A DNA stretch of 64,000 nucleotides from Podarcis erhardii. Taxonomy: Eukaryota. Where the stretch lies: NCBI GenBank assembly GCA_964252035.1, contig OZ176202.1; one strand, given 5' to 3'. Under the pieces are notes generated by a model that saw only the letters and a list, made by a program, of their open reading frames with translations, searched no databases and had not been told where the DNA came from. Made by a program: the position numbers and the translations under genes. Shown piece after piece: positions 12,992 through 26,165 of the stretch (positions within the stretch are counted from its first letter, which is position 1; each line of letters begins with the position of its first letter).

Positions 12992-14987
12992 CACTGGAGT
13001 CTAGTTGTTTCAGTCTCGAAAAAATAAGTAGTTAACCTGCATCCTGAAAACTGTTTTAGCTGTCCTATTGTATAGTGCTAGAGTTACTGCTAGGATCACT
13101 TCCTTCCAATTAAAAGAAATATAAATTCCATAGAGGAAGCTAAATCAACTGTGTAAAAGTTCACCAGGAGTTAGTGCTGGTCTCCATTTCAATGCCAGTG
13201 AGCAATTTTGGAACAAGGGAAGTCATAGTAAGAATGTATTGTTGACCTGGAACAAGGGTGGAATTTGGTCTTTCAAATTTCAGCAGCGACCTGTGTGAGG
13301 CCAAAATTCAGCACATGCCCCTCCTGCCTTTCCTTCTTTTCTGCTCAATCCACTATGTCATAGTTGCAGTGCCCTGCAGCACCCCCTAGATTTGGCACCC
13401 AGTGCAACCCAAAGTTTCCTGTGAAGAGGGTGTGAGCCCCAGGCATCTCCCATTTTAGAATTTCAGCAATACTTTCAGACATGGGCATAGCCAGGATTTT
13501 TGTTAGGGGGAGCATAATCGATGTGATTGGTCAGTTAGCAGCTTCCCCTCTGCGCCCACCCCCCCTATGCTCATGCTTCCAGAAATATACTGCAGTTGAA
13601 ACAAAGTTGCTACAAAGCAGTCCAGGTTGTGGATAGACCTGAAATGTTTTTCCCCTCAGGCTGCAATCCTTATAGCTCTGGTTTTGTGCATGTTAAGTTT
13701 CATGGATCTCAACAGGACTTGCTCCGAAGTGCGTTTGAGCTGCAACTCTTCTTGTACAAACCACATAGCAAGAGACTGAAACAACTAGACTCCAGTGCAT
13801 AGTAAGCAGCTGTTTAAGGTCACCGCTGTCAACTTTACGTGTAAATTTACATTGCTTCAATTCAACAAAAACTTTGCAAAGTCTCGTGGGACCTTTTTAC
13901 CTCTTGACACAAGCACACAAAACCACCTTCTCAGAAGAGGACCACAATGAATCTGTTATGGTGCCACAAAACATATTTCAGGGATAACCCCAACAAATGC
14001 CTTCCTGCAGACCCAGACGACGACCCGCTGCTGCTTTCACCGTTCCCGACCCCTGGCTCTGCTGCCGGGGAGCGGCGACTGACGGCAGCCGTCACCCCTA
14101 ACATCTTTATGTGCGACTCAGGGATTTGCCCCCGCGGAAGGCAGTTCATGAAATGGAAACTTCTCAACCTGCAGGGAGTTTATGCCGCAGCAATACACCA
14201 CACCTGTTAAACTTGTGAGGGACTGCAACATTATTTATTTCTGAGCAGGTGGGGCGTGTGCGCGCTCATGCTCTACTACTGCAAAGCTGAGGTGGTTTCT
14301 CTTCTCAAAGGGACTCAATACAGTCAGGAGCACCCGCCTCTCAAGGCAGCCGCTTATCGGAAGAATTCCGGCTCTCGCCTTTCAAAGGCAAACAGCGCAA
14401 GGGAGGCTCGCAGCGAGGACACCAATCAGGCCCGGCGCTTGCCTCGCTCCGCCCTTCTGCTTGGCACCACCTCCCCGCCCGCGGCCGCCGCTTGCTTGCT
14501 CGAAGGCCGGATTTCTACCAAACCGGTTCTCGCCGGCTCCCTCCGCCTTTAGCCTCTTCCTTTTCCCCGCCCTTTTCTCCTCCCTTCTCCTCTTCTAAAT
14601 CCCCGCCCACCGCCACACGCCTGACCGTGGCCGCGCGCGCGCCCTTCCGACGCCTCCGATTGGCCGGGCGCCGCCGCTCGCGGGAGGCGTTTGTGACGCG
14701 GCAAAGCTTCCGAGCTCCCCCCCCCCCGCCTGCTTTTCGTAAAGGCAACGGGTTAGGGGGTTGGAGAGGAACGGGGCGGGGCGTCGCATGACACGCGCGC
14801 GCCGGAGAGCGGGGCGGCGCTTAAAGACAGCTCCGCCCACTCCAGCCTCTCCGCTTTTCTGCTTGCCTTGCGCAGAAGAGCGCGCGAGCAGAGGCCCCGC
14901 CGCAGCTCCTCCCCCGAGCCCCTCCCACGCCCTGCCGCTTTTCCTTTCTGCCGTCAGAGCCGCGTTAGCAACACCGCCGCCACCAGA

Positions 14988-15040
14988 AGCAGCAGCAGCA
15001 GCAGCAGCAGCAAGAGGAGCTCCTCCTCCTCCTCCTCCTC
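14988..15040 (+). repeat. (AGC)8 followed by a (TCC)n tract in the PTP4A1 leader
   Basis: Seen directly in sequence. Confidence 0.95.
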
Positions 15041-15245
15041 GTGTCCGCGCGCGCGCCCCCCTCTTCGGTCTCTCCCCTCCCCCTTCTCTCTCTCTCTCTT
15101 TCTCTCCCCCTCCGGCTCCTCCTCTGCCCTGCATGGTCCATCGCCGCCGCCCTGCTCCGGCACCACCACCTCCGCGGCCGCCTCCGCTTCCCTCAGGCTC
15201 AGCTCCTCCTGCCCTCGGCGGTGGCGCCCTCAGCACCCAGGCTGT

Positions 15246-15284
15246 ATGATCAGGCTACAGTCTTCAATGAGTAACCATATTCCT
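15246..15284 (+). CDS. PTP4A1 spliced uORF, part 1 (MIRLQSSMSNHIP)
   Basis: ATG at 15246, 13 codons up to a phase-0 GT donor. Confidence 0.75.
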
Positions 15285-18200
15285 GTGAGTAACGGGCGAC
15301 CCTCTCGCCGCCTCTCAGCACCGTTTTCCCCCTCTCTGCCCTCCCCCTTCTCTCTTTCTCTCCCTCCATGTTCGTTTCTTTGTTCCTTGGGCCGCGACGG
15401 CGTTTCCCTCAGGCGGGCGGGCATGTCGTGGAAGCCCCCCCCCCCCTTTCCCAGCTGAGGCGCCGTCCTCTCAGGCGAGGCGGCGGCGGCGGCACACAAA
15501 GCCTCCCTTCTCTTCTCGAAAAGGGAGGAGGACGCCGCTCCCTCAAGCTGTTCTTCTTCCTCTGGGCTCCTTTCCCCGCGTCGCTGTGGAAGCGGCGGCA
15601 GATGGCCGCGTCCTGACTGGACTGGGCCATGGAGGGGAGGCATAGAGTGAGAGAAGGGGGCTTCGACGCCCTTTCCGAAGGAGGCGTCGCCACTGTCTGG
15701 AAGTGGCGGGATGGGGTGGGGGAGAAGTAGGAGCCGCGCGGAGGGAGGGAGCGAAGCAGCAGCAGCAGCAACAAGCATCTCCTCGATGTTTGCGGTCGGC
15801 ACGGAGGGGGGAGGGCGTCGGTGAGCCTGCAAGCCCCACCGCCATGCTGCATGGGGGGTGGGGGTTTCCATGGCCCGGCCGCGCGCGCCACGTGCCCCCC
15901 GCTTCCTTTCCATCCGTGCCCGGCCCATCGGGGGTTGTCTCTGCGGCGTGTCTCTCGACCTTTAAACCCAGTCGCGACGACGTGTCGTTTGCCCGATGGC
16001 CCCCCCCTTTTTCTTTTACGCCGGGCGGCGCCGCGCTGCTTTCTGGGGGGCCACCGGTCCGCGTGTACCCCTGAAAGCCCCCGCCAGTGGGGAGGCGAAG
16101 GATGCAAGGATTGCCGGTGGCGGGTGGGGGAGAAACACGAACACACACACGTACGTTAGTGAAATCGTGCGTGTTTAAAATAGGGGAACAAGTGTATTCA
16201 ATCACAAACGCCAGCCTCAACAATTCGGATTACGCCTCCGCTTGTCTTAAAGCGGGTTCAGAAGGGACGCCGCGTGCAGAAAGATTTGGGACAGTTCTTA
16301 AGGAGTAGTCATTAGCCGCCTCTTCCCATACTCTGGGTGACTGCAGCTCCGTTAGAAAAGGCCAGTCCGCCCTTGGTGCCTACCTCTGCCCAAGAGATGC
16401 ATCCGATCCTAGACAGCGCGAATGAAGCACGCCAGATTCCCCCCACCGCACACACCCGAATTGTATCAATGGGCTTCGCTGTGAGTCGTGACTCTGGGAA
16501 AGGAAGCGGGGGCGTTTCTCTCCACCCCTTGCTGCGTGGCTCGTTGAGGCGAGGAAAGGAAACAAGTCGAGACATGTCCCGGCCGCTACCTGGCCGTGGC
16601 GGGGCTATTGCGCTTCCGAGTGTGACTCACCACTGGGGCGTGCGGGGAGGGGGTGAAGGGAGAGTGGCGAGGACATCCGGCGGGGCTGGGTCAGCGTGGC
16701 TTTCCCGTCTCTCTGCTGTCTGCATGCAGATGACGAGCACGCTGCTTCCCGCTCCCGCTGCAGTCACACGCCGGAAGAAGGTGGGGGAACCGCAAAAAGG
16801 ACGCGATCGGGGCAAAAAGATTTTTTTGCCAGGTTTCCTGCGCAGGCGGTTGCTAGGGTGGGAAGAGAGCGACAGTCTGGAACACGACCTCGTGTCTGCT
16901 TTGCTAGGGAGACCCTGTCACTTGGGCTGAGGAAGCATGCACTTGTGTGTCATGTGAGAAGCATATTAAGTGTCAAGAAAAGTGATGTGGTTTATAGGTT
17001 TTGAGTTAACAAGGCAGTCAATCTTTCGGCTGAGTCACAGGATTATATTTACTGTAATTTGGAACATCCTAGTAAGTTTGTTTATATGAGGCCATGATGG
17101 AGGACTTCAACACCCCCCCCCAATCAAGTTATTTTCTAAACACTTGGGGAATGGTTGGTTTGCATATTTTTCAAAGTAATTTCTAAAGTCAATAACCAAT
17201 AAATTTTGGAATTACTGTAGTTAAGGTGTCTACATTCCTCGATTGTTTTTGAGACTCCATACAAATGTTTTGGCTACTTAAGAAAAATTGTAAAAGCTAT
17301 AATTGGCTAAAGGCAGTGATAATGATCTTTTTTTCATGGAACAGGGTGTACCATAATCAATCCAGATTCATTTTGTAAGCAGAAATTAGAACCTGATCAA
17401 AATCAGTGGGGATTTGTAAAGACACATTGAACAGTTCTTCAATCTAAAATATCCTTTGAGTCTGGAGGAGTTTCTACTGCTGGCTGTCTTTTGCTATAGC
17501 CTGAATTTTTAACTGGAGGAGGCAGTTATTCATGTATCATGAAATGGCTACCATGCCTGCTCACTGATTCAGGCACCTGCCCCATCCCAATTCCAGAGCT
17601 TCCACCTCCTCAGACGTTCCTTCTGTTATTCCTCCTTCTTGTCATTTGTCACTTTTCCCATTTCATCTACTTCTTGCACCTTCCCACACACTTCTAATCA
17701 AGCTACTTTTCTGCAGTTCTCAGGGCTAGCATTCTAATCTTGGTTTCTTCCTATGGTTCCAGGCAGTTTCCAATGGCTTTCCAGCCATGTCATGCTCTAC
17801 AGCTCACTTGCTTGTCCTGATGCTTTGAGTGTGGTTGCTAGTGTAGGATGTGGGGAGGAAACAGGAAGAACCTAAAGTGGCTGAGTTCAATAAATGCATA
17901 TGCAATTTTGTTTGAAAGACTTTAGGACTCTTCGCAACATGGCAGAAGCTTTTTTACCTTCAAAAATTTGTACGAAGCCCAAAGTTGTTGTCATTTCTCT
18001 AAATAAAATAGCAACTTTAGTTACAGTAGGACTTGGAGCAGACTTGTTTGTAACAGATTCCCTGTTGCAATAATACTTGGAACATGTAGTTCAGGTAGGC
18101 AAATACCATGCAGGGTAGGCACATATGAAATTACTAATTGAGCCACAATGTTTCAGTGACAACTGTTTGTAGTGGTCAGTTTGCTTGTCAGAGACAACAA

Positions 18201-21200
18201 CTATTAATTTACAACTGTGGGCTGAAACTATGTAATAAACAGTTCTGATAGTGCAATAACTTTTTGATACACAGTGGAGCTTACCTGCGCGACCCTCAGT
18301 TCTGACAGTTCCCCAGTCATCCAGATCAGATTAATTTGTCTTGAAAAGAGAGCATCTTGTGCAAAGAGGAATGAACTGGTACTAAGTTTAAAACGTGTTG
18401 ACTATAATAAGTGAATTCTCAGATTACAGGATAAATAGATAAATTTTGCTGTGGTCAAATTTCTATTTTAGCTTCATAGCTTTCAATTTCGTCTCTCCTT
18501 TTCTTTGTCTTCTATTGCTACAGTGGTCTTTTAAAAGTTGTTCTGTTAGGTTTATGTGCTGTCCTTTTATCTTAACTATACATTTAAGAAGTTCTTATAT
18601 TTAAAAGTACTGGGTTGTCTCCAGGGCTGTCTTTCCATGAACAGAAGGTTCTGGTGATTTAAACGATTTAACCCTTGCTCTTGTGCAGCACTCCTCACCA
18701 CCTAAAGCCACACACACACACCACCTCTGGAGTAGATTGGGACAGGAACTCCAGAGGAAAGGGGAGGATCATCAGCAAGAAGCACCACTTTCACCATTGC
18801 ATTTAAGGGGCAGGAATTTATGCTGAATCAAAGCTACCAGTGAACAGAAGGACTGTATTGGCTGCAATTAGGTTCCTTCTGTGGAGGTTCTCATACTGTT
18901 CCAGAGGATCCACCTACTCTCGAGCATATTTGGGGAGTAGGCAAAAAATGCATTGCTCCCACACTTCAGTGTGCAGAACTCTGCCCTGGGCGTCTCTGGA
19001 TCTCACCATTATCGTTAATTGTTATGTTCAATATTATATGAACTGGCTGTTTTATATTGCTTACAGTGTGCAATCATAACATTGCCCAGAGAGCCATTGT
19101 AATGAGGTGGCAACACATGCAATAAATAAAATCTTAAACAAGAGGCATACACATAGAAGACAGGCATGGATGCCATTTTAAAAACATCAATTTGGGACCA
19201 TTCCTTCCTATATCTGAGAATGGGGGAATGCTTCCTGCAGTTTTTCTGAACACTACTTTAAACAAATCCGTCTGATTAGGAATCTCATTTCTTGTTCATT
19301 AAATCTTTAATCAAACTGGTGATCCTAAACATTGCAGGCCAGTGAGCATTTCAGGATGGGAGAGAATGTCAGTTCTAAGATCATTTCTCAACAGACAAAT
19401 GCAACAACTTTTGGTGTTTCACAATTGCTGTGATTCCAAGGAGTGTATATGTCTTATCTGAGTCAGTTTGTTCCTTGGAAAAAATATGTAAGTAGCAAGA
19501 TGTTCAAATTAAAACACAGAAGCAGACTGTACTAGTTCTAGATCCACACCCCATATCAGAACATAAAGTTTTCAAGCACACAGTACGTCAAAGTGTATAA
19601 ATTTTGCTCTGTGAGTTGAGAATTGCCTGTAGATGGCATTACTAGAGAAGACAAAATTTGATATCTTGGATTAACTGATCAATACGAGTATCTTATTCGG
19701 AAAGATTCCTTCTTTCTGTGTGTCTCTGTATAGTCCAAAGCCAAGAAAGTGATTTGGACGGTGTTAGATGATGGGCAGATTATTTACTCTTCCGCTGTAG
19801 AAATATCTCAGGCTTGACAGTATTTTTTAAAATGTAGTGTCTTTTGTTTCTACGTACAATGCACAGTGTTTGAGAAGTTTCATGATACATGGAAACTTAC
19901 CATTCTTGAGTTTCATCAAAATAAAGTTGGCATACTGATGAGGATTCAATGCTGCTCTTGGGTTTGTTACTATAACCATGACAACTCAGCTGCCTTGGTC
20001 TGAAAAAGAGTTATCTTTAAGTGCATCTGTGGGTGCAGTTGCTTGGGGGCAGCTAAATATTTATTTGGTGTTGGCTCATATTAAATTCTTTATCTGCACT
20101 CCCTTCACCCTGCCTCCTTTCAGATAAGCCCTACCTTGTGGCTCAGAATTTACATGGTAGTATTATAGGATAGTTATTGTTCAGGCAAAAATAAGTAAAT
20201 GGAGGCATTGGTGTCTTATTACAACTGTTTTATTAAATGGGTGTGTGGGGGAAATAATCACACTTCATGAATAAAATATAGTTTGAAAATGAAGCAGTCT
20301 AAAGCATCCTTCCCCAATACAGTGCCCTCCAGATGTTGCTGGAGTATAACTTGCATTGGCTTCTACCAGCATGATCAGGGATGTTACCAACAAGCAATGG
20401 GTATGTAGCCAAACATTGGCTGAATAAGCCCCTCCCCTAAACTTGCCAGAACTCTGTTCTTACACTTCAGTTGCGGCATTCGGCAGGACTCCTTGTATTT
20501 AAACTGAGTTTGCACCCATTCACAGATAGTGCATACTGTATATGCAACAACGTGTATACTTGAACCACCCTCACAAGCAATCTTACCTTCCACAGCTAAT
20601 ATGCCATACGGGTATACCCCCATTCCCCCCACAAAGCAAGGCGGAGAATTTTAATGTTCTCTGCCTTGCTTACAGGAGTCTGGGAGGTTTTTTGCGAGTT
20701 CTTGTGTTTAATTTTTGTGATTTCAACCGAATGGCCTTCAACCATGTAAAGTTGAAATTGTGTATGTTGTGAGTGACCTGTATAGCTTATAATTCTTTAG
20801 ATGCATGTGTTAATGGAACTTGCTTAATTTAATCAAGCTTTAAAACTTCTGTAAAAATTTACATGAAGCAATCAGATTACCGTTTTTTCCCATGTATAAT
20901 GTTAATTTCAGGGGGGGGCGCTAATAATTAATTTTAATTTTTTATTTTAAATCTTTGTTATATTCATATTGTCCCTTGTATTCTGATTTTTCTTACGATA
21001 TTGTGTGTGTTGATGCTGGTCTGTGACCGTATTAATAAATTCATTCATTCACTCATTCATTCATTCATGTATAACACACACACACCCCATGTATAAGATG
21101 TCCCCTAATTTTGGGGACTCAAAATTAAGAAAATGGGGCGGGGGAGATTTCCCCCATGTATAGACTACCCCCTTTTTAACATTATTTTAAAGCAAAAAAC

Positions 21201-22688
21201 CCTAGTCTTATACACGGGAAAGTACAGTATGTCTTGGAGCATGCCTCATTTCTCTCCACAGTAGTATGCTGCTAACTTGCAATCCCTGGTTAACCATCCC
21301 AATGTGTGTTTCTGCTGTGGGAAAACTTGTTTACTTGGAGTTCTTTGATTTCAACCTCTGTGCTATAATTGTAGTTGTTGCAGGAAAGCTTTACCATACT
21401 TTTCCTTGTATAAGACTAGGTTTCCCCCTCTAAAATAATGTTTAAAAAGGGGGTTGTCTTATACACTGGGGCCACCTTCCCCTATTTTCGTAAATTTGAG
21501 TCCCCAAAAATAGGGGCTGTGTTATACACTGAAAAATTCAGTAATTCTCCCAGTAATGAATATTGCTTTAGTAAAACTGCTTTCCTCATCTTGAACGAGG
21601 AGGCGACTTGGAACTTGCCATTTACTGGCTTAACTGCCAGTGGCCATGAAACCCCTTGAATGGTAACAGTTGTATCATGAACAGTGTTATAATCACACTG
21701 AAATTCCTGTAGGTGGCTTGCTTCTAAGCATGAAAACCAGTGATTTTGATAAGCCCTTTAAGGCCCATAGGCAGGACCCCAAAGAGAGGGTTCTCATTAG
21801 TAGATGCACCATCTAGTGTTTTTCTTGCCATTAAATATGTATTATTGAAGTGTCCTCCTTCAGCCTCCAAACTCTTGATACAAGCTGCTGATTCCCAACC
21901 TAAGTAAATTGAGTTCATTGGCATTTTTCCTTTATTAAGCACTTCATCATTTTAATAACTGTCTTCTGAATTAAGTTTGAGTGAGGTTTAATGCTGGTTT
22001 TATTTAGAAAAGTAGGTTGCATATCACATTCCAGTTTGGATTTTGTTTTGTTTTTAATCCTTATTAATGCCACTCTTACAAATAATATTTCATGGAATGG
22101 TCATCCATCCTGTTTCACTCACCTCCTCCCTTCTCTGAAAACTCAGCAAATGCTATACAGCAGCTGCCTTTTCCTATGCAAAGGAACTATAACCTGTTAA
22201 GGATTGTTCCTGTCTTAAATAGCCAGTGTAATGCTCACCTGGGGCTACAGTGACCAGAGTTCAGGGGTTGTGGGTTACCATAGGGCTAAATGGATGACTA
22301 TACACCTTATTTACAGGATTGTTAATAAATCATAAAACACCACAAATGTTGCCTCCAAGTCATTTAGAATTTGTGTAATGTATACATGTTGTAATAAACA
22401 GGGTTTCATTTGGGAGGCCATGTGACAGGCATCTTTAGATCTCTACACTCTTTAAGCTTGGAAGGAAAACTTCCTGCACCTTCTGCAGAATGGAAAGTGA
22501 TCCAGAACAAAGGTCTGTTCTTGATACTAATCACTTGAGTTTGCCACCTCTTGGGAGACAGAGAGAGAGCTGTCAGTCTTCCTGAATGCTGTTTTTAAAT
22601 TAACCTGAGGAATTGCAAGGATTATCAAAATATCTTCAATACAGTAAAGTAGGTTTTCTTATTTTAGAAGAAACAAGTTTGTCTAAAT

Positions 22689-22824
22689 CAGACATAGGCA
22701 AACCCCAGCCCTCCAGATGTTTGGGACTACAATTCCCATCATCTCTGACCATTGGTCCTGTTAGCTAGGGGTGGTGGTAATTGTAGTCTCAAACATCTGG
22801 AGGGCTGTAGTTTGCCTATGCCTG
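22689..22824. mobile_element. hAT-type palindromic MITE in PTP4A1 intron 1
   Basis: TIR CAGACATAGGCAAAC / GTTTGCCTATGCCTG; perfect TSD GTCTAAAT at 22681-22688 and 22825-22832. Confidence 0.9.
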
Positions 22825-22955
22825 GTCTAAATTAAGGACATTCTCAATATTGGTGGTTCATTCCTTTATGTTACCTTTACCCAAGAATAAGCTATTTGTA
22901 AAGATACCTGCTCAGTCACTGACAAATGTGCTCTTCTTTTTCTCTCTCTTTGCAG

Positions 22956-23051
22956 CAGTTCTGTGGTGTTCTTGGTCACACATTTATGGAGTTTCTGAAG
23001 GGCAGTGGGGACTACTGCCAGGCACAGCACGGCCTCTATGCAGACAAGTGA
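22956..23051 (+). CDS. PTP4A1 spliced uORF, part 2 (QFCGVLGHTFMEFLKGSGDYCQAQHGLYADK*)
   Basis: Acceptor TTTGCAG|CAG at 22955/22956, open for 31 codons to TGA at 23049-23051, in frame with part 1. Confidence 0.75.
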   Translation, partial: QFCGVLGHTFMEFLKGSGDYCQAQHGLYADK

Positions 23052-23405
23052 ACTATAGAAATTGATTACTACTCCACCAAGAAGCCCCCTTAAGAGTGGT
23101 TACCAGAATAAGACGTGTTGAGTTGAAATTGGCAGAGCATTTTACAAAGGAGTTCAGACCTGGATGGGGTAGCCTTGCTGCACTGCCTTTCTCTTTGCCT
23201 CAGTATTACAGGATTGAAGAATTGCTGCTTCTTGTTTAGGAGGTTCATTTCATTTCCCATTGCTCCCAACTTCATGCTTGTCAGCACGGGAAACTTCAAG
23301 TGGCTTTTAGTGGAGTAGACTTCGGTTTCTCCCAATCAATTCTGCTAGGTTTTTTGTTTTTTAAAAAATATTATTGGTCTTGTTGGACATTTTAACTAAA
23401 TTAAC

Positions 23406-23510
23406 ATGGCCCGAATGAACCGCCCAGCTCCTGTGGAAATCACTTACAAGAATATGAGATTCCTTATCACTCACAATCCAACCAATGCAACCTTAAACAA
23501 GTTCATAGAG
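23406..23510 (+). CDS. PTP4A1: PRL-1 protein tyrosine phosphatase, coding exon 1 ([14 protein letters not shown]...NKFIE)
   Basis: Recognisable PRL-1 N-terminus; strong Kozak AACATGG; donor GAG|GTAAGG. Confidence 0.98.
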
Positions 23511-24190
23511 GTAAGGGTTCTTGAGTGGGAGGCTTATATTTATTTTTGTAATGTTGAAAAGTTTGATATAGCAGTATTACTGAAATTTGCCTTAGACAGT
23601 ATTACTGAAATTTGCCTTGACTACCAACATGATGGTCTGTTAAGAGTTAATTTAACCTTATTTATTTTACACCACCATTCAGTCATTCGCAATACAGATT
23701 TCTTTATTGCATAGTAGTTGCATGTTCAAGAATTCCTCAAAACTGCATTTAGGTTAAGTGTTAAACTAATGTTACAGGGCAGAAGAGGGCAACCAGAATG
23801 ATCAAGTGGATAGAGCTCTACTTTCAGAGGTAATATGTGAATACCACTTGCTGGAAACTTCAAGAGAAGAGAGTGCTCTTGAGCTCAGGTCCTGCTTATG
23901 GGCATCTGGTCGGCCACTGTGAGAACATGATGTTAGACTAGATGGACCTGTGGCCTCATCCAGCAGGTGGTTCTTCTGTTCTTAAAGATAGTCCTGCCCA
24001 CTTGAATTCCTCTGCTATACTTCAGGTCTTTTTAGATATTTGTTAAGTAGTGCTGCTTGAAGAGGTGAAATGCAATAATTATAGGTCTTCTGAACAGCCT
24101 CTGTATTTGAAATTGTTCACAAAATTGCAATAGTCTGAGCATGAACATCAACACGGTATCATTAAGATATGTATCACTCTCTCCCCTTAG

Positions 24191-24283
24191 GAACTTAAGA
24201 AGTATGGAGTTACTACAGTAGTAAGAGTATGTGAAGCCACTTATGATACTGCTCCAGTAGAGAAAGAAGGCATTCAGGTTTTG
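24191..24283 (+). CDS. PTP4A1: PRL-1 coding exon 2 ([31 protein letters not shown])
   Basis: CCTTAG acceptor, GTGAGT donor, 93 nt; contains the redox Cys49. Confidence 0.98.
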
Positions 24284-24532
24284 GTGAGTAGCTTATTAAA
24301 AAGATAACATTAGCCATAGGATTTTTTAATTTCTATGGTGCAAGTGAGTGAACATGGAGGGGGAAATAATGCAGGTTGTGGTAATCTGGCCTTCAGATTT
24401 CTATGGATGTTTTAAAGCGAGAGAAGAAACGCAAATCAGGCAGTGATTTGTTAACTGTAAGACAAATTAAGAAGTACTATTCTAGGATATGTGGATGTTT
24501 AGGTAAGAAATTATTCACTTCATGCATTCCAG

Positions 24533-24663
24533 GATTGGCCCTTTGATGACGGAGCACCACCATCTATCCAGATTGTTGATGATTGGCTAAACCTCCTAAA
24601 AGTTAAATTCCGTGAAGAGCCTGGTTGTTGCATTGCTGTACACTGTGTTGCTGGTCTTGGAAG
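24533..24663 (+). CDS. PTP4A1: PRL-1 coding exon 3 ([10 protein letters not shown]...HCVAGLG)
   Basis: WPFDD loop and catalytic HCVAGLGR P-loop; CAG acceptor, GTAAAC donor, 131 nt. Confidence 0.98.
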
Positions 24664-25131
24664 GTAAACAGAACTCCAAAATGCTATCTGCTCTGACTTC
24701 TCTACCAAACACCGATTCCATTAGCTAGTCTTACCGAGGTGGGGAATGGCTTGTAGTAAGTTACAGCTGTATGTGTATTATTGTCTTTTCAAATCAATGA
24801 AGCTTTGACTAATGAGAGATTGCAGCCCATATATCTAGTGAATTAGCTCTTGAACAGAGTGTTAACAGGGAACCTGTAAATTTGCACTAATCTGAGCAAG
24901 GAGATCAGTATTTGTAACAGTGAATGGCAGCTTTTGTGTTCCTCAAGCGCCAGTTTATGATTTTGGGTAATATACAGTTTGCATATGTAATTAATAAAAT
25001 TCACTATATCCATCAGATTTTTGCAGGGCAAAAGTATAAGTGTACTATGAAATAGTTGTTTGGGTCTACAAAATGGGAGAAAATGACTATGAGGAAACAT
25101 TCTGCAACTTGTGTTCTTTCCCTTCCACCAG

Positions 25132-25206
25132 AGCACCTGTATTAGTTGCCCTTGCACTCATTGAATGTGGAATGAAGTATGAGGATGCAGTGCAGTTCAT
25201 AAGACA
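25132..25206 (+). CDS. PTP4A1: PRL-1 coding exon 4 ([24 protein letters not shown])
   Basis: CCACCAG acceptor, GTAAGT donor, 75 nt. Confidence 0.98.
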
Positions 25207-26047
25207 GTAAGTATTAAGCATCTGCCTTGTACATACCTGCCAATGACAGTTAGGAAAATCTTGAATTCCATACTTCAAAAAGTTGCTTTTTGTTGCTAGG
25301 ACCACATGCAGCACAAGGCCTAAGCATCTGGCTATTTTTAATATTTCTTTAGCCCCTCTTCCACTGTATGAATGCTGTGTCCCTGCAAATCGGCCATTGC
25401 CAGGAGAGATTTTAAAGTCCTAGTCTAATAGTGGATTGTACAAGAGAAGGCAAAAAGAAGAAATGCGAAGGCTGAAGCTACAGTAGAAGTGGAATTGTAG
25501 GTGTGACTTGTACATCTGTATGTATCTCTATAACAAATTAGTGAACAGCTGAAAAAAACAGTAAAACAAAGCCATTAAAGGCAAGAGAAGTTAACATAAA
25601 TAACAAAACAGAACTCTACACACACACCCCATTTAAAAATAGTTCAAAGAGTCTCAGATTACCTAAATTATTTTTAAAGCCTGAGTGAAGTATTTACCTG
25701 GTGCCACAGAAGATTGCAAAGATGGCAACTTGGCATGCCTCCTTGGAAAGGCTATTCCATAACTGGGTACTACTGGAAAGACTCTCTCCCTGGCAGTTGC
25801 TTGGCTCACTTCATTCAGCAAGCGCAGGTCCTTGGAAGAGCATTTTTAAAGTTCAGATGAATGACAGAAGGCAGGCTTTCAGTACAAAGTGAAAACTTGT
25901 TTTTCAATGAGGGTGGGGATTCTGTCCTTGCTAGGGCTCTTATAAAGAAACAAAACCTATCTTGAGCATATGATACTTGGTCACAAGTGAAGTAGTGTTA
26001 CTTTCAGCACTCATAATTAACATGTTCAATATTTGAATGTTTTGTAG

Positions 26048-26165
26048 GAAGCGCCGTGGAGCCTTTAACAGCAAGCAGCTTCTCTATTTGGAGAAATATC
26101 GTCCGAAAATGCGACTGCGTTTTAAAGATTCAAATGGTCACCGTAACAACTGTTGTATTCAGTAA
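26048..26165 (+). CDS. PTP4A1: PRL-1 last coding exon ([38 protein letters not shown])
   Basis: TTTGTAG acceptor; polybasic region and CAAX box CCIQ; TAA stop. Exon total 105+93+131+75+118 = 522 nt = 173 aa plus stop. Confidence 0.98.

What the first reader, a model, noticed from the sequence alone, without database searches (positions are those of the whole stretch)
15246..23051. 44-aa peptide uORF spliced across the 7.7-kb first intron of PTP4A1
Seen: ATG 15246 gives MIRLQSSMSNHIP up to a phase-0 GTGAGT donor, and the exon-2 acceptor continues in frame with QFCGVLGHTFMEFLKGSGDYCQAQHGLYADK-TGA (23051). It has three in-frame AUGs (15246, 15267, 22986), all lacking a -3 purine, and ends 354 nt before the strong PRL-1 AUG. 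An unspliced ORF track cannot show it. Known: PRL-1 and PRL-2 translation in mammals is controlled by a conserved Mg2+-sensitive uORF, and PRLs bind CNNM Mg2+ transporters. As I recall the human leader, it encodes a near-identical peptide (MIRPQSSMSKHIPQFCGVLGHTFMEFLKGSGDYCQAQHDLYADK). Inference: this is a peptide-sequence-constrained ribosome-stalling sensor, or a microprotein in its own right, retained in reptiles.
Basis: partly seen in the sequence, partly recalled or inferred. Interest (0 to 1): 0.82.

Follow-up and report, generated by a model that had tools for sequence, protein, structure and literature searches.

The report
Known PTP4A1 leader peptide uORF
The spliced 44-codon upstream reading frame is real, but it is the lizard copy of the already published and already annotated magnesium-sensing leader peptide of the PTP4A1 (PRL-1) gene, so it is an ordinary orthologue, not a discovery.

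Summary

The peptide is not new. This exact 44-residue sequence is already in NCBI for squamates (Pogona, Eublepharis, "LOC128125822 homolog"). It sits upstream of PTP4A1 in ten squamate genomes, and in birds, turtles, mammals, teleosts and lamprey. Its conservation from human to fish was published in 2014, and its function as a sequence-dependent, Mg2+-sensitive repressor in 2019-2020.

- **Selection on the peptide:** substitutions are skewed to synonymous (15:10 overall, 6:1 in the core).
- **Extra constraint on the RNA:** synonymous sites are 2-6 times more constrained than in the adjacent PTP4A1 coding exons, so constraint is not purely on the peptide. No RNA structure explains this.
- **Age:** the core peptide reaches PTP4A2 and molluscs.
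- **Second conserved element:** a two-codon AUG-GGG-stop uORF lies about 100-180 nt downstream in all 22 vertebrate PTP4A1 leaders and in one invertebrate contig.

RNA reads show exon 1 is transcribed. The junction could not be shown directly, because the allowed stretch cannot span the intron.

The parts
15133..15249 (+). Upstream uORF: 38 codons from ctgcATGg. Its TGA stop (15247-15249) overlaps the AUG of the conserved uORF (gtATGA).
   Evidence: Read from the sequence. RNA reads cover this part of exon 1. The motif CTG[C/T]ATGGTCCA is conserved in sauropsids. The ORF ends at the overlapping TGA in the window and in 11 of the 13 sauropsid loci checked.
15246..15284 (+). Exon-1 part of the conserved-peptide uORF (codons 1-13, MIRLQSSMSNHIP). 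The second in-frame AUG (M8) is at 15267.
   Evidence: These 39 nt are identical in ten squamate genomes. M8 is invariant and is the start in lamprey and in the invertebrate forms.
15285..22955 (+). Intron 1 (7,671 nt), phase 0, GTGAGT...ttgcag.
   Evidence: The same intron position is found from lamprey to mammals. Sense RNA depth falls to about 0 from 15400. An intronless retrocopy in a ground squirrel preserves the joined form.
22953..22958 (+). Tandem acceptor cagCAG (NAGNAG). The second AG would remove Q14.
   Evidence: 43-aa isoforms lacking Q14 are annotated in gecko, turtles and alligator. In lamprey and in the invertebrate contig the acceptor sits directly before F15.
22956..23051 (+). 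Exon-2 part of the uORF (codons 14-44 plus TGA). The invariant core FCGVLGHTFMEFLKGSGDYCQAQH is codons 15-38.
23052..23405 (+). 354-nt spacer to the main AUG. The first ~180 nt are conserved in amniotes. ATG triplets are fewer than shuffles predict.
23164..23172 (+). Two-codon uORF, ATG GGG TAG.
   Evidence: ATGGGGTAR is present in 22 of 22 vertebrate PTP4A1 leaders, 103-117 nt after the uORF stop (161 nt in lamprey). It is usually the only ATG in the spacer. ATGGGGTGA occurs in the invertebrate contig L027. In the window the motif occurs once, against 0.06 expected.
23274..23318 (+). Lineage-specific uORF of 14 codons.
   Evidence: Present only in the window and its two closest relatives, L003 and L004.
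23406..26165 (+). PTP4A1 (PRL-1) coding region, 173 aa. Exons: 23406-23510, 24191-24283, 24533-24663, 25132-25206, 26048-26165.

Best explanation
This is the squamate orthologue of the PTP4A1 conserved-peptide uORF.

**Most likely mechanism**
1. Scanning ribosomes meet three in-frame AUGs in deliberately weak context. Some of them translate the 43/44-residue peptide.
2. The nascent core (FCGVLGHTFMEFLKGSGDYCQAQH) acts in cis inside the ribosome. It slows or arrests the ribosome and so blocks access to the PRL-1 AUG 354 nt downstream.
3. When intracellular Mg2+ falls, the block is relieved and PRL-1 is made. PRL-1 then binds CNNM proteins to restore Mg2+.

**Shown here**
- The ORF, its splice signals and its position.
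- Transcription of exon 1.
- Orthology.
- Selection on the amino-acid sequence.

**Taken from papers on mammals**
- Mg2+ sensitivity.
- Dependence on the peptide sequence.

**Inferred**
- That the same mechanism operates in this reptile.
- That arrest happens at or just after the ...CQAQH motif, not at the stop codon.
For: **Identity**
- The exact peptide (P0034) is already in NCBI and UniRef for Pogona, Eublepharis and other Bifurcata.
- It is annotated 335-360 nt upstream of PTP4A1 in ten squamate genomes.
- The same arrangement, with the phase-0 intron after HIP, is found in birds and turtles, mammals, teleosts and lamprey.

**Selection on the peptide**
- Minimum synonymous to non-synonymous events are 15:10 over the 44 codons (binomial P = 1e-5) and 6:1 in the core (P = 3e-4).
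- Core dN is 0 in every jawed-vertebrate comparison except one teleost, L018 (one change, C16R; dN 0.017). PTP4A1 CDS dN is 0.02-0.04 in the mammal and teleost comparisons.
- Against an invertebrate contig, 20 of 24 core residues are kept through 7 synonymous codon changes.

**Conserved start and stop signals**
- The weak start context ggctgtATGAT and the stop context AGTGAAC are conserved.

**Function, from papers**
- Conserved Mg2+-sensitive uORF in the PRL-1/2 leaders (PMC10083557).
- Rearranging the coding sequence abolishes Mg2+ sensitivity (review PMC11855589).
- A frameshift in the human PTP4A1 uORF de-represses a reporter (PMC7530721).

**Transcription here**
- Sense reads cover exon 1, including both the upstream AUG and the uORF AUG.
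Against: - No joint read was obtained for 15284/22956 in this animal.
- Nothing here tests translation, stalling or Mg2+ response in a reptile.
- Synonymous sites in the uORF are 2-6 times more constrained than in the neighbouring CDS. Core pS is 0.14 against 0.87 versus a teleost, and 0.07 against 0.25 versus a bird. Part of the conservation therefore serves something other than the peptide.
- The last six codons evolve almost neutrally (3 synonymous: 5 non-synonymous). This is unlike classic arrest peptides, whose C-termini matter most.
- In mouse and human, some transcripts start inside the leader and would lack the uORF. The share of uORF-bearing mRNA here is unknown.
Confidence: 0.82

Rival explanations
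1. The ORF's main role is to make a free 44-residue microprotein that acts in trans. Repression of PRL-1 is then only a by-product.
For: - NCBI and GENCODE annotate these uORFs as protein-coding genes.
- The PTP4A2 uORF product has HLA-I peptide evidence in human (PMC13275300).
- The amino-acid sequence is under purifying selection.
Against: - AlphaFold gives only a low-confidence single helix (pLDDT 62, pTM 0.33).
- The peptide has no Pfam family and no atlas relatives.
- The ORF has stayed linked to a PRL gene from molluscs to mammals, across the PTP4A1/PTP4A2 duplication. This is what a cis element would do.
- The human frameshift reporter shows a cis effect.
Confidence: 0.1
2. The conserved thing is an RNA or DNA element: a structure, a protein-binding site, an internal promoter or a splicing enhancer within a hyperconserved transcript leader. 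The open frame is secondary.
For: - Synonymous constraint is far above that of the adjacent CDS.
- Among squamates, 91-97% of uORF columns are invariant. Conservation continues about 180 nt past the stop (0.72-0.91), as high as in the first coding exon (0.78-0.88).
- Ptp4a1 is listed among hyperconserved leaders, and transcripts initiate inside it.
Against: - Substitutions that do occur are strongly biased to synonymous.
- Start, frame, intron phase and stop are kept for more than 500 million years, and into molluscs, where the nucleotides have diverged.
- The predicted fold is no better than shuffled sequence (z = +1.3). The covariation term is 0.1 kcal/mol.
- No Rfam family matches.
Confidence: 0.07
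3. It is a chance open frame created by joining two exons of an untranslated leader.
For: None beyond the short length.
Against: - Homologues reach E = 1e-21 by word-index search and 2e-30 by profile search.
- The peptide is identical in ten squamate genomes.
Confidence: 0.01

Closest known systems
Human and mouse PTP4A1 (PRL-1) conserved-peptide uORF. Papers: Crowe 2006; Skarshewski 2014, PMC3914846; Hardy 2019, PNAS (not held in the library); Takahashi 2020, PMC7530721. NCBI gene LOC128125822.
   Same: - Same gene and same place in the leader.
- Same intron.
- 40-41 of 44 residues identical to boreoeutherian entries.
- Same weak start contexts, the same stop context and the same downstream AUG-GGG-stop.
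   Different: Only lineage substitutions at residues 4, 10 and 39. The upstream overlapping uORF differs in frame and length between clades.
PTP4A2 (PRL-2) uORF (GENCODE c1riboseqorf55).
   Same: Paralogous peptide with the shared motif TFM..L...DFCQAQH...ADK-TGA. It is spliced and lies upstream of a 167-aa PTP4A2 in alpaca. It is reported to be Mg2+-sensitive like PRL-1.
   Different: - The core is much more diverged.
- The alpaca leader has no AUG-GGG-stop element.
- It is not in this window.
Nascent-peptide arrest uORFs: fungal arginine attenuator peptide, AMD1 MAGDIS, the DDIT3/CHOP uORF and plant CPuORFs (from my own knowledge).
   Same: A small-molecule or ion-dependent cis repression that depends on the peptide, not the nucleotide sequence.
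   Different: In those cases the critical residues abut the stall or stop codon. Here the invariant block ends six codons before the stop, and synonymous sites are also constrained.
TRPM7 Mg2+-sensitive uORFs (Nikonorova 2014, cited in PMC11855589).
   Same: Translational control by uORFs that responds to Mg2+, within the same homeostatic network.
   Different: Unrelated sequence. The proposed mechanism is competition between ORFs, not a conserved peptide.
GCN4/ATF4-type delayed reinitiation leaders, and start-stop or minimal uORFs (from my own knowledge).
   Same: Several uORFs at conserved spacing. PTP4A1 translation resists eIF2 phosphorylation (PMC4383229).
   Different: Reinitiation at the AUG-GGG-stop element has not been shown. 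This is a lead only.

Membership tests
PTP4A1 conserved-peptide uORF (LOC128125822 homologues) | Lies in the 5' leader of a PTP4A1 orthologue, upstream of the main AUG and not overlapping it. | tested here: met
   The stop at 23051 is 354 nt before the AUG of a 173-aa PTP4A1. The layout is the same in 21 other loci.
PTP4A1 conserved-peptide uORF (LOC128125822 homologues) | Peptide homologous to the family, with the invariant core F-x-GVLG-x-TFMEF...GDYCQAQH. | tested here: met
   The exact sequence is on record as P0034. Homologues reach E = 1e-21. There are 22 invariant columns across 14 vertebrates.
PTP4A1 conserved-peptide uORF (LOC128125822 homologues) | ORF split by a phase-0 intron after codon 13. 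| tested here: met
   GT and AG signals are at 15285 and 22955. The position is identical from lamprey to mammals.
PTP4A1 conserved-peptide uORF (LOC128125822 homologues) | The junction is used in the mRNA of this species. | tested here: inconclusive
   Exon 1 is transcribed in sense and depth ends within 15200-15399. The acceptor was outside the allowed 6-kb stretch, so no joint could be listed.
PTP4A1 conserved-peptide uORF (LOC128125822 homologues) | Mg2+-dependent repression of the main ORF. | not testable with these tools
   Known only from work on mammalian cells.
Nascent-peptide ribosome-arrest uORFs | Purifying selection on the amino-acid sequence rather than on the nucleotide sequence. 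| tested here: met
   Synonymous to non-synonymous events are 15:10 (P = 1e-5), and 6:1 in the core. 20 of 24 core residues are kept against the invertebrate contig, through 7 synonymous changes. Caveat: dS is itself depressed.
Nascent-peptide ribosome-arrest uORFs | The conserved residues abut the arrest site or the stop codon. | tested here: inconclusive
   Codons 39-44 are variable (3:5, not significant). However, the invertebrate forms end 1-2 codons after ...CQAQH. This points to arrest at that motif.
Nascent-peptide ribosome-arrest uORFs | Stalled ribosomes on the uORF. | not testable with these tools
   No Ribo-seq data are available here.
Autonomous microprotein | A confident independent fold, or a known domain. 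| tested here: not met
   pLDDT 62, pTM 0.33, a single helix over residues 18-42. No Pfam family and no atlas match.
Structured RNA element | Stability above shuffled sequence, covariation, or an Rfam match. | tested here: not met
   z = +1.3. The covariation term is 0.1 kcal/mol. Rfam finds nothing in the leader.

The most novel reading that the evidence does not exclude
The PRL leader may be a bilaterian-old two-part module in which both parts are needed.
- **Part 1:** the conserved-peptide uORF.
- **Part 2:** an obligatory two-codon AUG-GGG-stop uORF about 100-180 nt downstream. It is present in 22 of 22 vertebrate PTP4A1 leaders and in one invertebrate contig, and it may act as a reinitiation checkpoint.

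In vertebrates the peptide-coding RNA would also carry a second, non-coding layer of information. This would explain synonymous sites that are 2-6 times more constrained than those of the PTP4A1 CDS. An upstream uORF that ends on the AUGA overlap may feed ribosomes into the weak-context start.

I could not read Hardy 2019 or the ESUCA supplement, so some of this may already be described.
Probability: 0.2. Interest if true: 0.5.

Novelty: already known. Interest (0 to 1): 0.15.

Why it matters
- The uORF has been published since 2006-2014.
- It was functionally dissected in 2019-2020.
- It is annotated as a gene in human and in many reptiles.

It does show that the scan can recover spliced uORFs that an unspliced ORF track misses.

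The by-products are of modest interest to people working on translational control. They give concrete, cheap reporter experiments that separate peptide-level from RNA-level information in a Mg2+ sensor:
- Unusually strong synonymous constraint with no detectable RNA structure.
- An invariant AUG-GGG-stop partner element.
- The ancestral start at M8 and the ancestral acceptor before F15.
- The reach of the core peptide into molluscs.

Tried and rejected
1. **Stop-codon readthrough or a TGG variant.** Several Logan proteins continue "...ADKW TVEIHYYSTKKPP". The DNA has TGA, so the W comes from a gene caller using a code in which TGA is a sense codon. Rejected.
2. **RNA structure as the cause of synonymous constraint.** The local hairpin GGCAGUGG/CUACUGCC is predicted. 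However, the MFE is no better than shuffles, there is no covariation, and the hairpin is broken in lamprey.
3. **Rfam.** Nothing in the leader.
4. **Protein atlas and AlphaFold.** No informative relatives and no confident fold.
5. **Alternative first exon** like the gecko isoform X3 (MNLLLPCL). Not found in the window's intron.
6. **Frog locus.** No DNA was served.
7. **Second loci in the same mammal.** I suspected PTP4A2, but the one I checked (ground squirrel) is a processed PTP4A1 retrocopy. The true PTP4A2 uORF was found only by the profile search.
8. **Joint reads.** The intron (7.7 kb) exceeds the 6-kb limit and only one read-laying run is allowed.
9. **Hardy 2019 (PMC6386685).** Not held in the library. 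The ESUCA supplement is not held either.
10. **Earlier findings of the scan.** They held only this same stretch.
Full report
**1. Observation**

- ATG 15246 opens 13 codons (MIRLQSSMSNHIP) that end at 15284, directly before GTGAGT.
- A polypyrimidine tract and AG end at 22955.
- Exon 2 continues in frame from 22956 for 31 codons to TGA 23049-23051.
- The three in-frame AUGs (15246, 15267, 22986) all have T at -3.
- The main AUG at 23406 has A at -3 and G at +4. It lies 354 nt after the uORF stop.

I located the downstream coding exons with a guide protein and fixed them by GT-AG and frame. They give a 173-residue PTP4A1.

The second AG would drop Q14.

**2. It is already on record**

A search with the 44-residue peptide returned 33 homologues. 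Most are named by NCBI "uncharacterized LOC128125822 homolog". They come from birds, rodents, alligator, gecko, turtle, frogs, teleosts and lamprey.

An exact look-up showed that this very sequence (P0034) is held by NCBI and UniRef for Pogona vitticeps, Eublepharis macularius and other Bifurcata, on 16 genome contigs.

In ten squamate genomes it is annotated as a separate 44-residue gene. That gene is split by an intron of 5.4-10.1 kb and lies 335-360 nt upstream of PTP4A1.

The same layout, with the phase-0 intron after HIP and the start context ggctgtATGAT, holds in turtle and bird, mammal and teleost loci. The teleost loci have the LGSN neighbour expected for PTP4A1. In lamprey the intron position and the peptide core are kept, but the annotated start corresponds to M8 and its context differs.

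Isoforms of 43 residues lacking Q14 are annotated in gecko, turtles and alligator. The tandem acceptor is therefore used.

An intronless ground-squirrel copy carries the joined uORF, the leader and a stop-interrupted CDS. It is a processed retrocopy, and so a DNA fossil of the spliced mRNA.

**3. Literature**

- Skarshewski et al. [quoted passage not shown]
- Hardy et al. 2019 is not held in the library. Later papers from the same group and others cite it for a conserved Mg2+-sensitive uORF in the PRL-1/2 leaders. Rearranging its coding sequence abolishes Mg2+ sensing, and the response depends on AMPK/mTORC2.
- Takahashi et al. 2020 used the human PTP4A1 uORF as a positive control, and a frameshift de-repressed the reporter. 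They note that, unlike their other picks, it was not chosen for a conserved C-terminus.
- Their taxonomic bins include "Sauropsida other than Aves" and "Lophotrochozoa". The table for this uORF is not held.
- PTP4A1 translation resists eIF2 phosphorylation.
- Ptp4a1 is counted among the hyperconserved transcript leaders, and about a third of mouse transcripts start inside the leader. A human Ensembl transcript used as a 5' UTR source begins inside the uORF.

**4. RNA in this animal**

Only one read-laying run of at most 6,000 letters was allowed, and the intron is 7,671 nt. I therefore laid two raw RNA-seq runs and two contig sets on 13000-18999, to see exon 1 and its donor.

| Window bin | Mean depth in the two raw runs (first mate on the minus strand, i.e. 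RNA from the + strand in the usual stranded library) |
|---|---|
| 15000-15199 | 4.6 and 6.9 |
| 15200-15399 | 2.4 and 5.1 |
| from 15400 | about 0 |

- 20 of 22 and 37 of 46 reads fit the stretch only partly.
- A third to a half of the laid reads run on for 20 or more letters unlike the stretch. This is what reads spliced to a distant exon would do.
- 14969-15128 was skipped as repeat, so the transcription start is not mapped. A little depth at 14800-14999 suggests it lies upstream of the ATG at 15133.
- No joint could be listed, and the loose end at 15284 was not among the rows shown.

Transcription of the uORF start is therefore shown. The junction in this species is supported only by homology and by the depth profile.

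**5. Is the constraint on the peptide?**

The ten squamate loci and the window differ at only four sites in 135 nt, and all four are synonymous.

The table gives the proportion of synonymous differences (Nei-Gojobori pS) between the window and other species.

| Window compared with | uORF core (codons 14-38) | Whole uORF | 78 PTP4A1 codons next door |
|---|---|---|---|
| Bird | 0.07 | 0.04 | 0.25 |
| Whale-type mammal | 0.14 | 0.16 | 0.50 |
| Teleost | 0.14 | 0.31 | 0.87 (saturated) |

- Core dN is 0 in all jawed-vertebrate pairs but one. Against teleost L018 there is a single change (C16R, dN 0.017).
- Minimum event counts:
  - Whole uORF: 15 synonymous to 10 non-synonymous (binomial P = 1e-5 against 19.5% synonymous sites).
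  - Core: 6:1 (P = 3e-4).
  - Last six codons: 3:5 (not significant).

Two things are therefore true together. The amino-acid sequence of residues 15-38 is under strong purifying selection. And synonymous sites are 2-6 times more constrained than in the neighbouring CDS, about 4-6 times in the bird and teleost comparisons.

I found no RNA-level cause for it:
- The fold of 22956-23215 is no better than shuffled sequence (z = +1.3).
- The alignment fold has a covariation term of 0.1 kcal/mol.
- Rfam finds nothing.

Codon-specific elongation kinetics, a protein-binding site, an exonic splicing enhancer next to the tandem acceptor, or an internal promoter all remain open.

**6. Depth of the family**

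A profile search of 1.84 billion representative proteins gave 74 hits, falling into three groups:
- **PTP4A1 type.**
- **A diverged PTP4A2 type.** In alpaca it is spliced across 14 kb and lies upstream of a 167-residue PTP4A2. It also occurs in eel and bonefish.
- **An invertebrate type.** It ends one or two residues after ...SGDYCQAQH. Named entries come from the molluscs Mizuhopecten, Elysia and Argonauta.

An unidentified ENA contig (L027) carries this third type 6.5 kb upstream of a PRL-like coding sequence. Against the window, the 24 core codons are 13 identical, 7 synonymous and 4 non-synonymous. This is clean evidence for selection on the peptide at a depth where the nucleotides have diverged.

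The lamprey form and the full-length members of the third group (unnamed Logan/JGI entries) start at the equivalent of M8. In lamprey and in L027 the acceptor sits directly before F15. The gnathostome M1-S7 extension and Q14 are therefore later additions. The ending of the invertebrate forms suggests that the functional C-terminus is the CQAQH motif.

**7. Other conserved parts of the leader**

- **AUG-GGG-stop element.** A two-codon uORF, ATG GGG TAR, lies at 23164-23172.
  - It is present in all 22 vertebrate PTP4A1 leaders examined, 103-117 nt after the uORF stop (161 nt in lamprey).
  - It is usually the only ATG in the 335-565 nt spacer.
  - The lamprey spacer has 1 ATG against 11.4 expected.
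  - L027 has ATG GGG TGA 178 nt after its uORF stop. The alpaca PTP4A2 leader has none.
- **Overlapping upstream uORF.** An upstream ATG at 15133, in a motif conserved across sauropsids, opens an ORF that ends at the TGA overlapping the uORF's AUG (AUGA). This is so in the window and in 11 of the 13 sauropsid loci checked, in 1 of 4 mammals and in 2 of 3 teleosts.
- **Amniote spacer.** In squamates, 72-91% of columns are invariant for about 180 nt past the stop, and the same stretch aligns closely across amniotes.

I could not establish whether these features are already described.

**8. Verdict**

The novelty class is "already known".

The most likely mechanism is cis repression by the nascent peptide, relieved at low Mg2+, as shown in mammals. 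For this reptile that is an inference from orthology.

The rivals are not excluded, but the evidence in hand favours none of them as the main role:
- The free-microprotein reading is weakened by the lack of a confident fold and by the ORF's permanent linkage to PRL genes.
- The RNA-element reading is weakened by the synonymous bias and by preservation of the frame.

Noticed in passing
window 23164-23172; also L001-L021 and L027:10395: A two-codon uORF, ATG GGG TAR, is present in all 22 vertebrate PTP4A1 leaders examined, 103-117 nt after the conserved uORF's stop (161 nt in lamprey). It is usually the only ATG in the spacer. An invertebrate PRL leader has ATG GGG TGA. The alpaca PTP4A2 leader has none.
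   Followed up: partly
window 15133-15249: An upstream uORF (38 codons) has its TGA overlapping the AUG of the conserved uORF (AUGA). Its start motif CTG[C/T]ATGGTCCA is conserved in sauropsids. The overlap is kept in the window and in 11 of the 13 sauropsid loci checked, despite length changes in the GC-rich repeat between them.
   Followed up: partly
window 22956-23051 compared with 23406-24663: Synonymous sites of the uORF are 2-6 times more constrained than those of the adjacent PTP4A1 coding exons in the same species pairs. No RNA structure, covariation or Rfam match accounts for it.
   Followed up: yes
L027 (ENA contig) and L028 (alpaca); proteins P0098, P0101, P0107, P0118: The core peptide ...G-x-LGHTFMEF...SGDYCQAQH also occurs upstream of PRL-like genes in molluscs (scallop, sea slug, argonaut). 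A diverged form lies upstream of vertebrate PTP4A2. Lamprey and full-length invertebrate-type forms start at the M8 equivalent, and the invertebrate-type forms stop 1-2 codons after QAQH.
   Followed up: partly
window 22953-22958: A tandem cagCAG acceptor. Isoforms with and without Q14 are annotated in gecko, turtles and alligator. In lamprey and in the invertebrate contig the acceptor is directly before F15.
   Followed up: partly
window 15191: All RNA reads in two runs (10 of 10 and 17 of 17) show A where the assembly has C. This is probably a polymorphism in exon 1, inside the upstream uORF.
   Followed up: no
window 22702-22811: A palindromic hairpin in intron 1 matches the mir-5408/mir-1304 models on both strands (51 bits, below the gathering score of 90). 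It looks like a small inverted-repeat transposon, not a curated miRNA.
   Followed up: no
window 13476-13510: A segment of about 31 nt is shared with many unrelated contigs and reads, with loose ends on both sides in all four runs. It is probably a fragment of a dispersed repeat.
   Followed up: no
window 23274-23318: A 14-codon uORF in the spacer occurs only in the window and its two closest relatives (L003, L004). It is lineage-specific and probably of little consequence.
   Followed up: partly
proteins P0020, P0021, P0023, P0025 (Logan/ENA): These database proteins continue past the uORF stop with a W. This is an artefact of gene calling with a code that reads TGA as a sense codon. The DNA has TGA.
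   Followed up: yes
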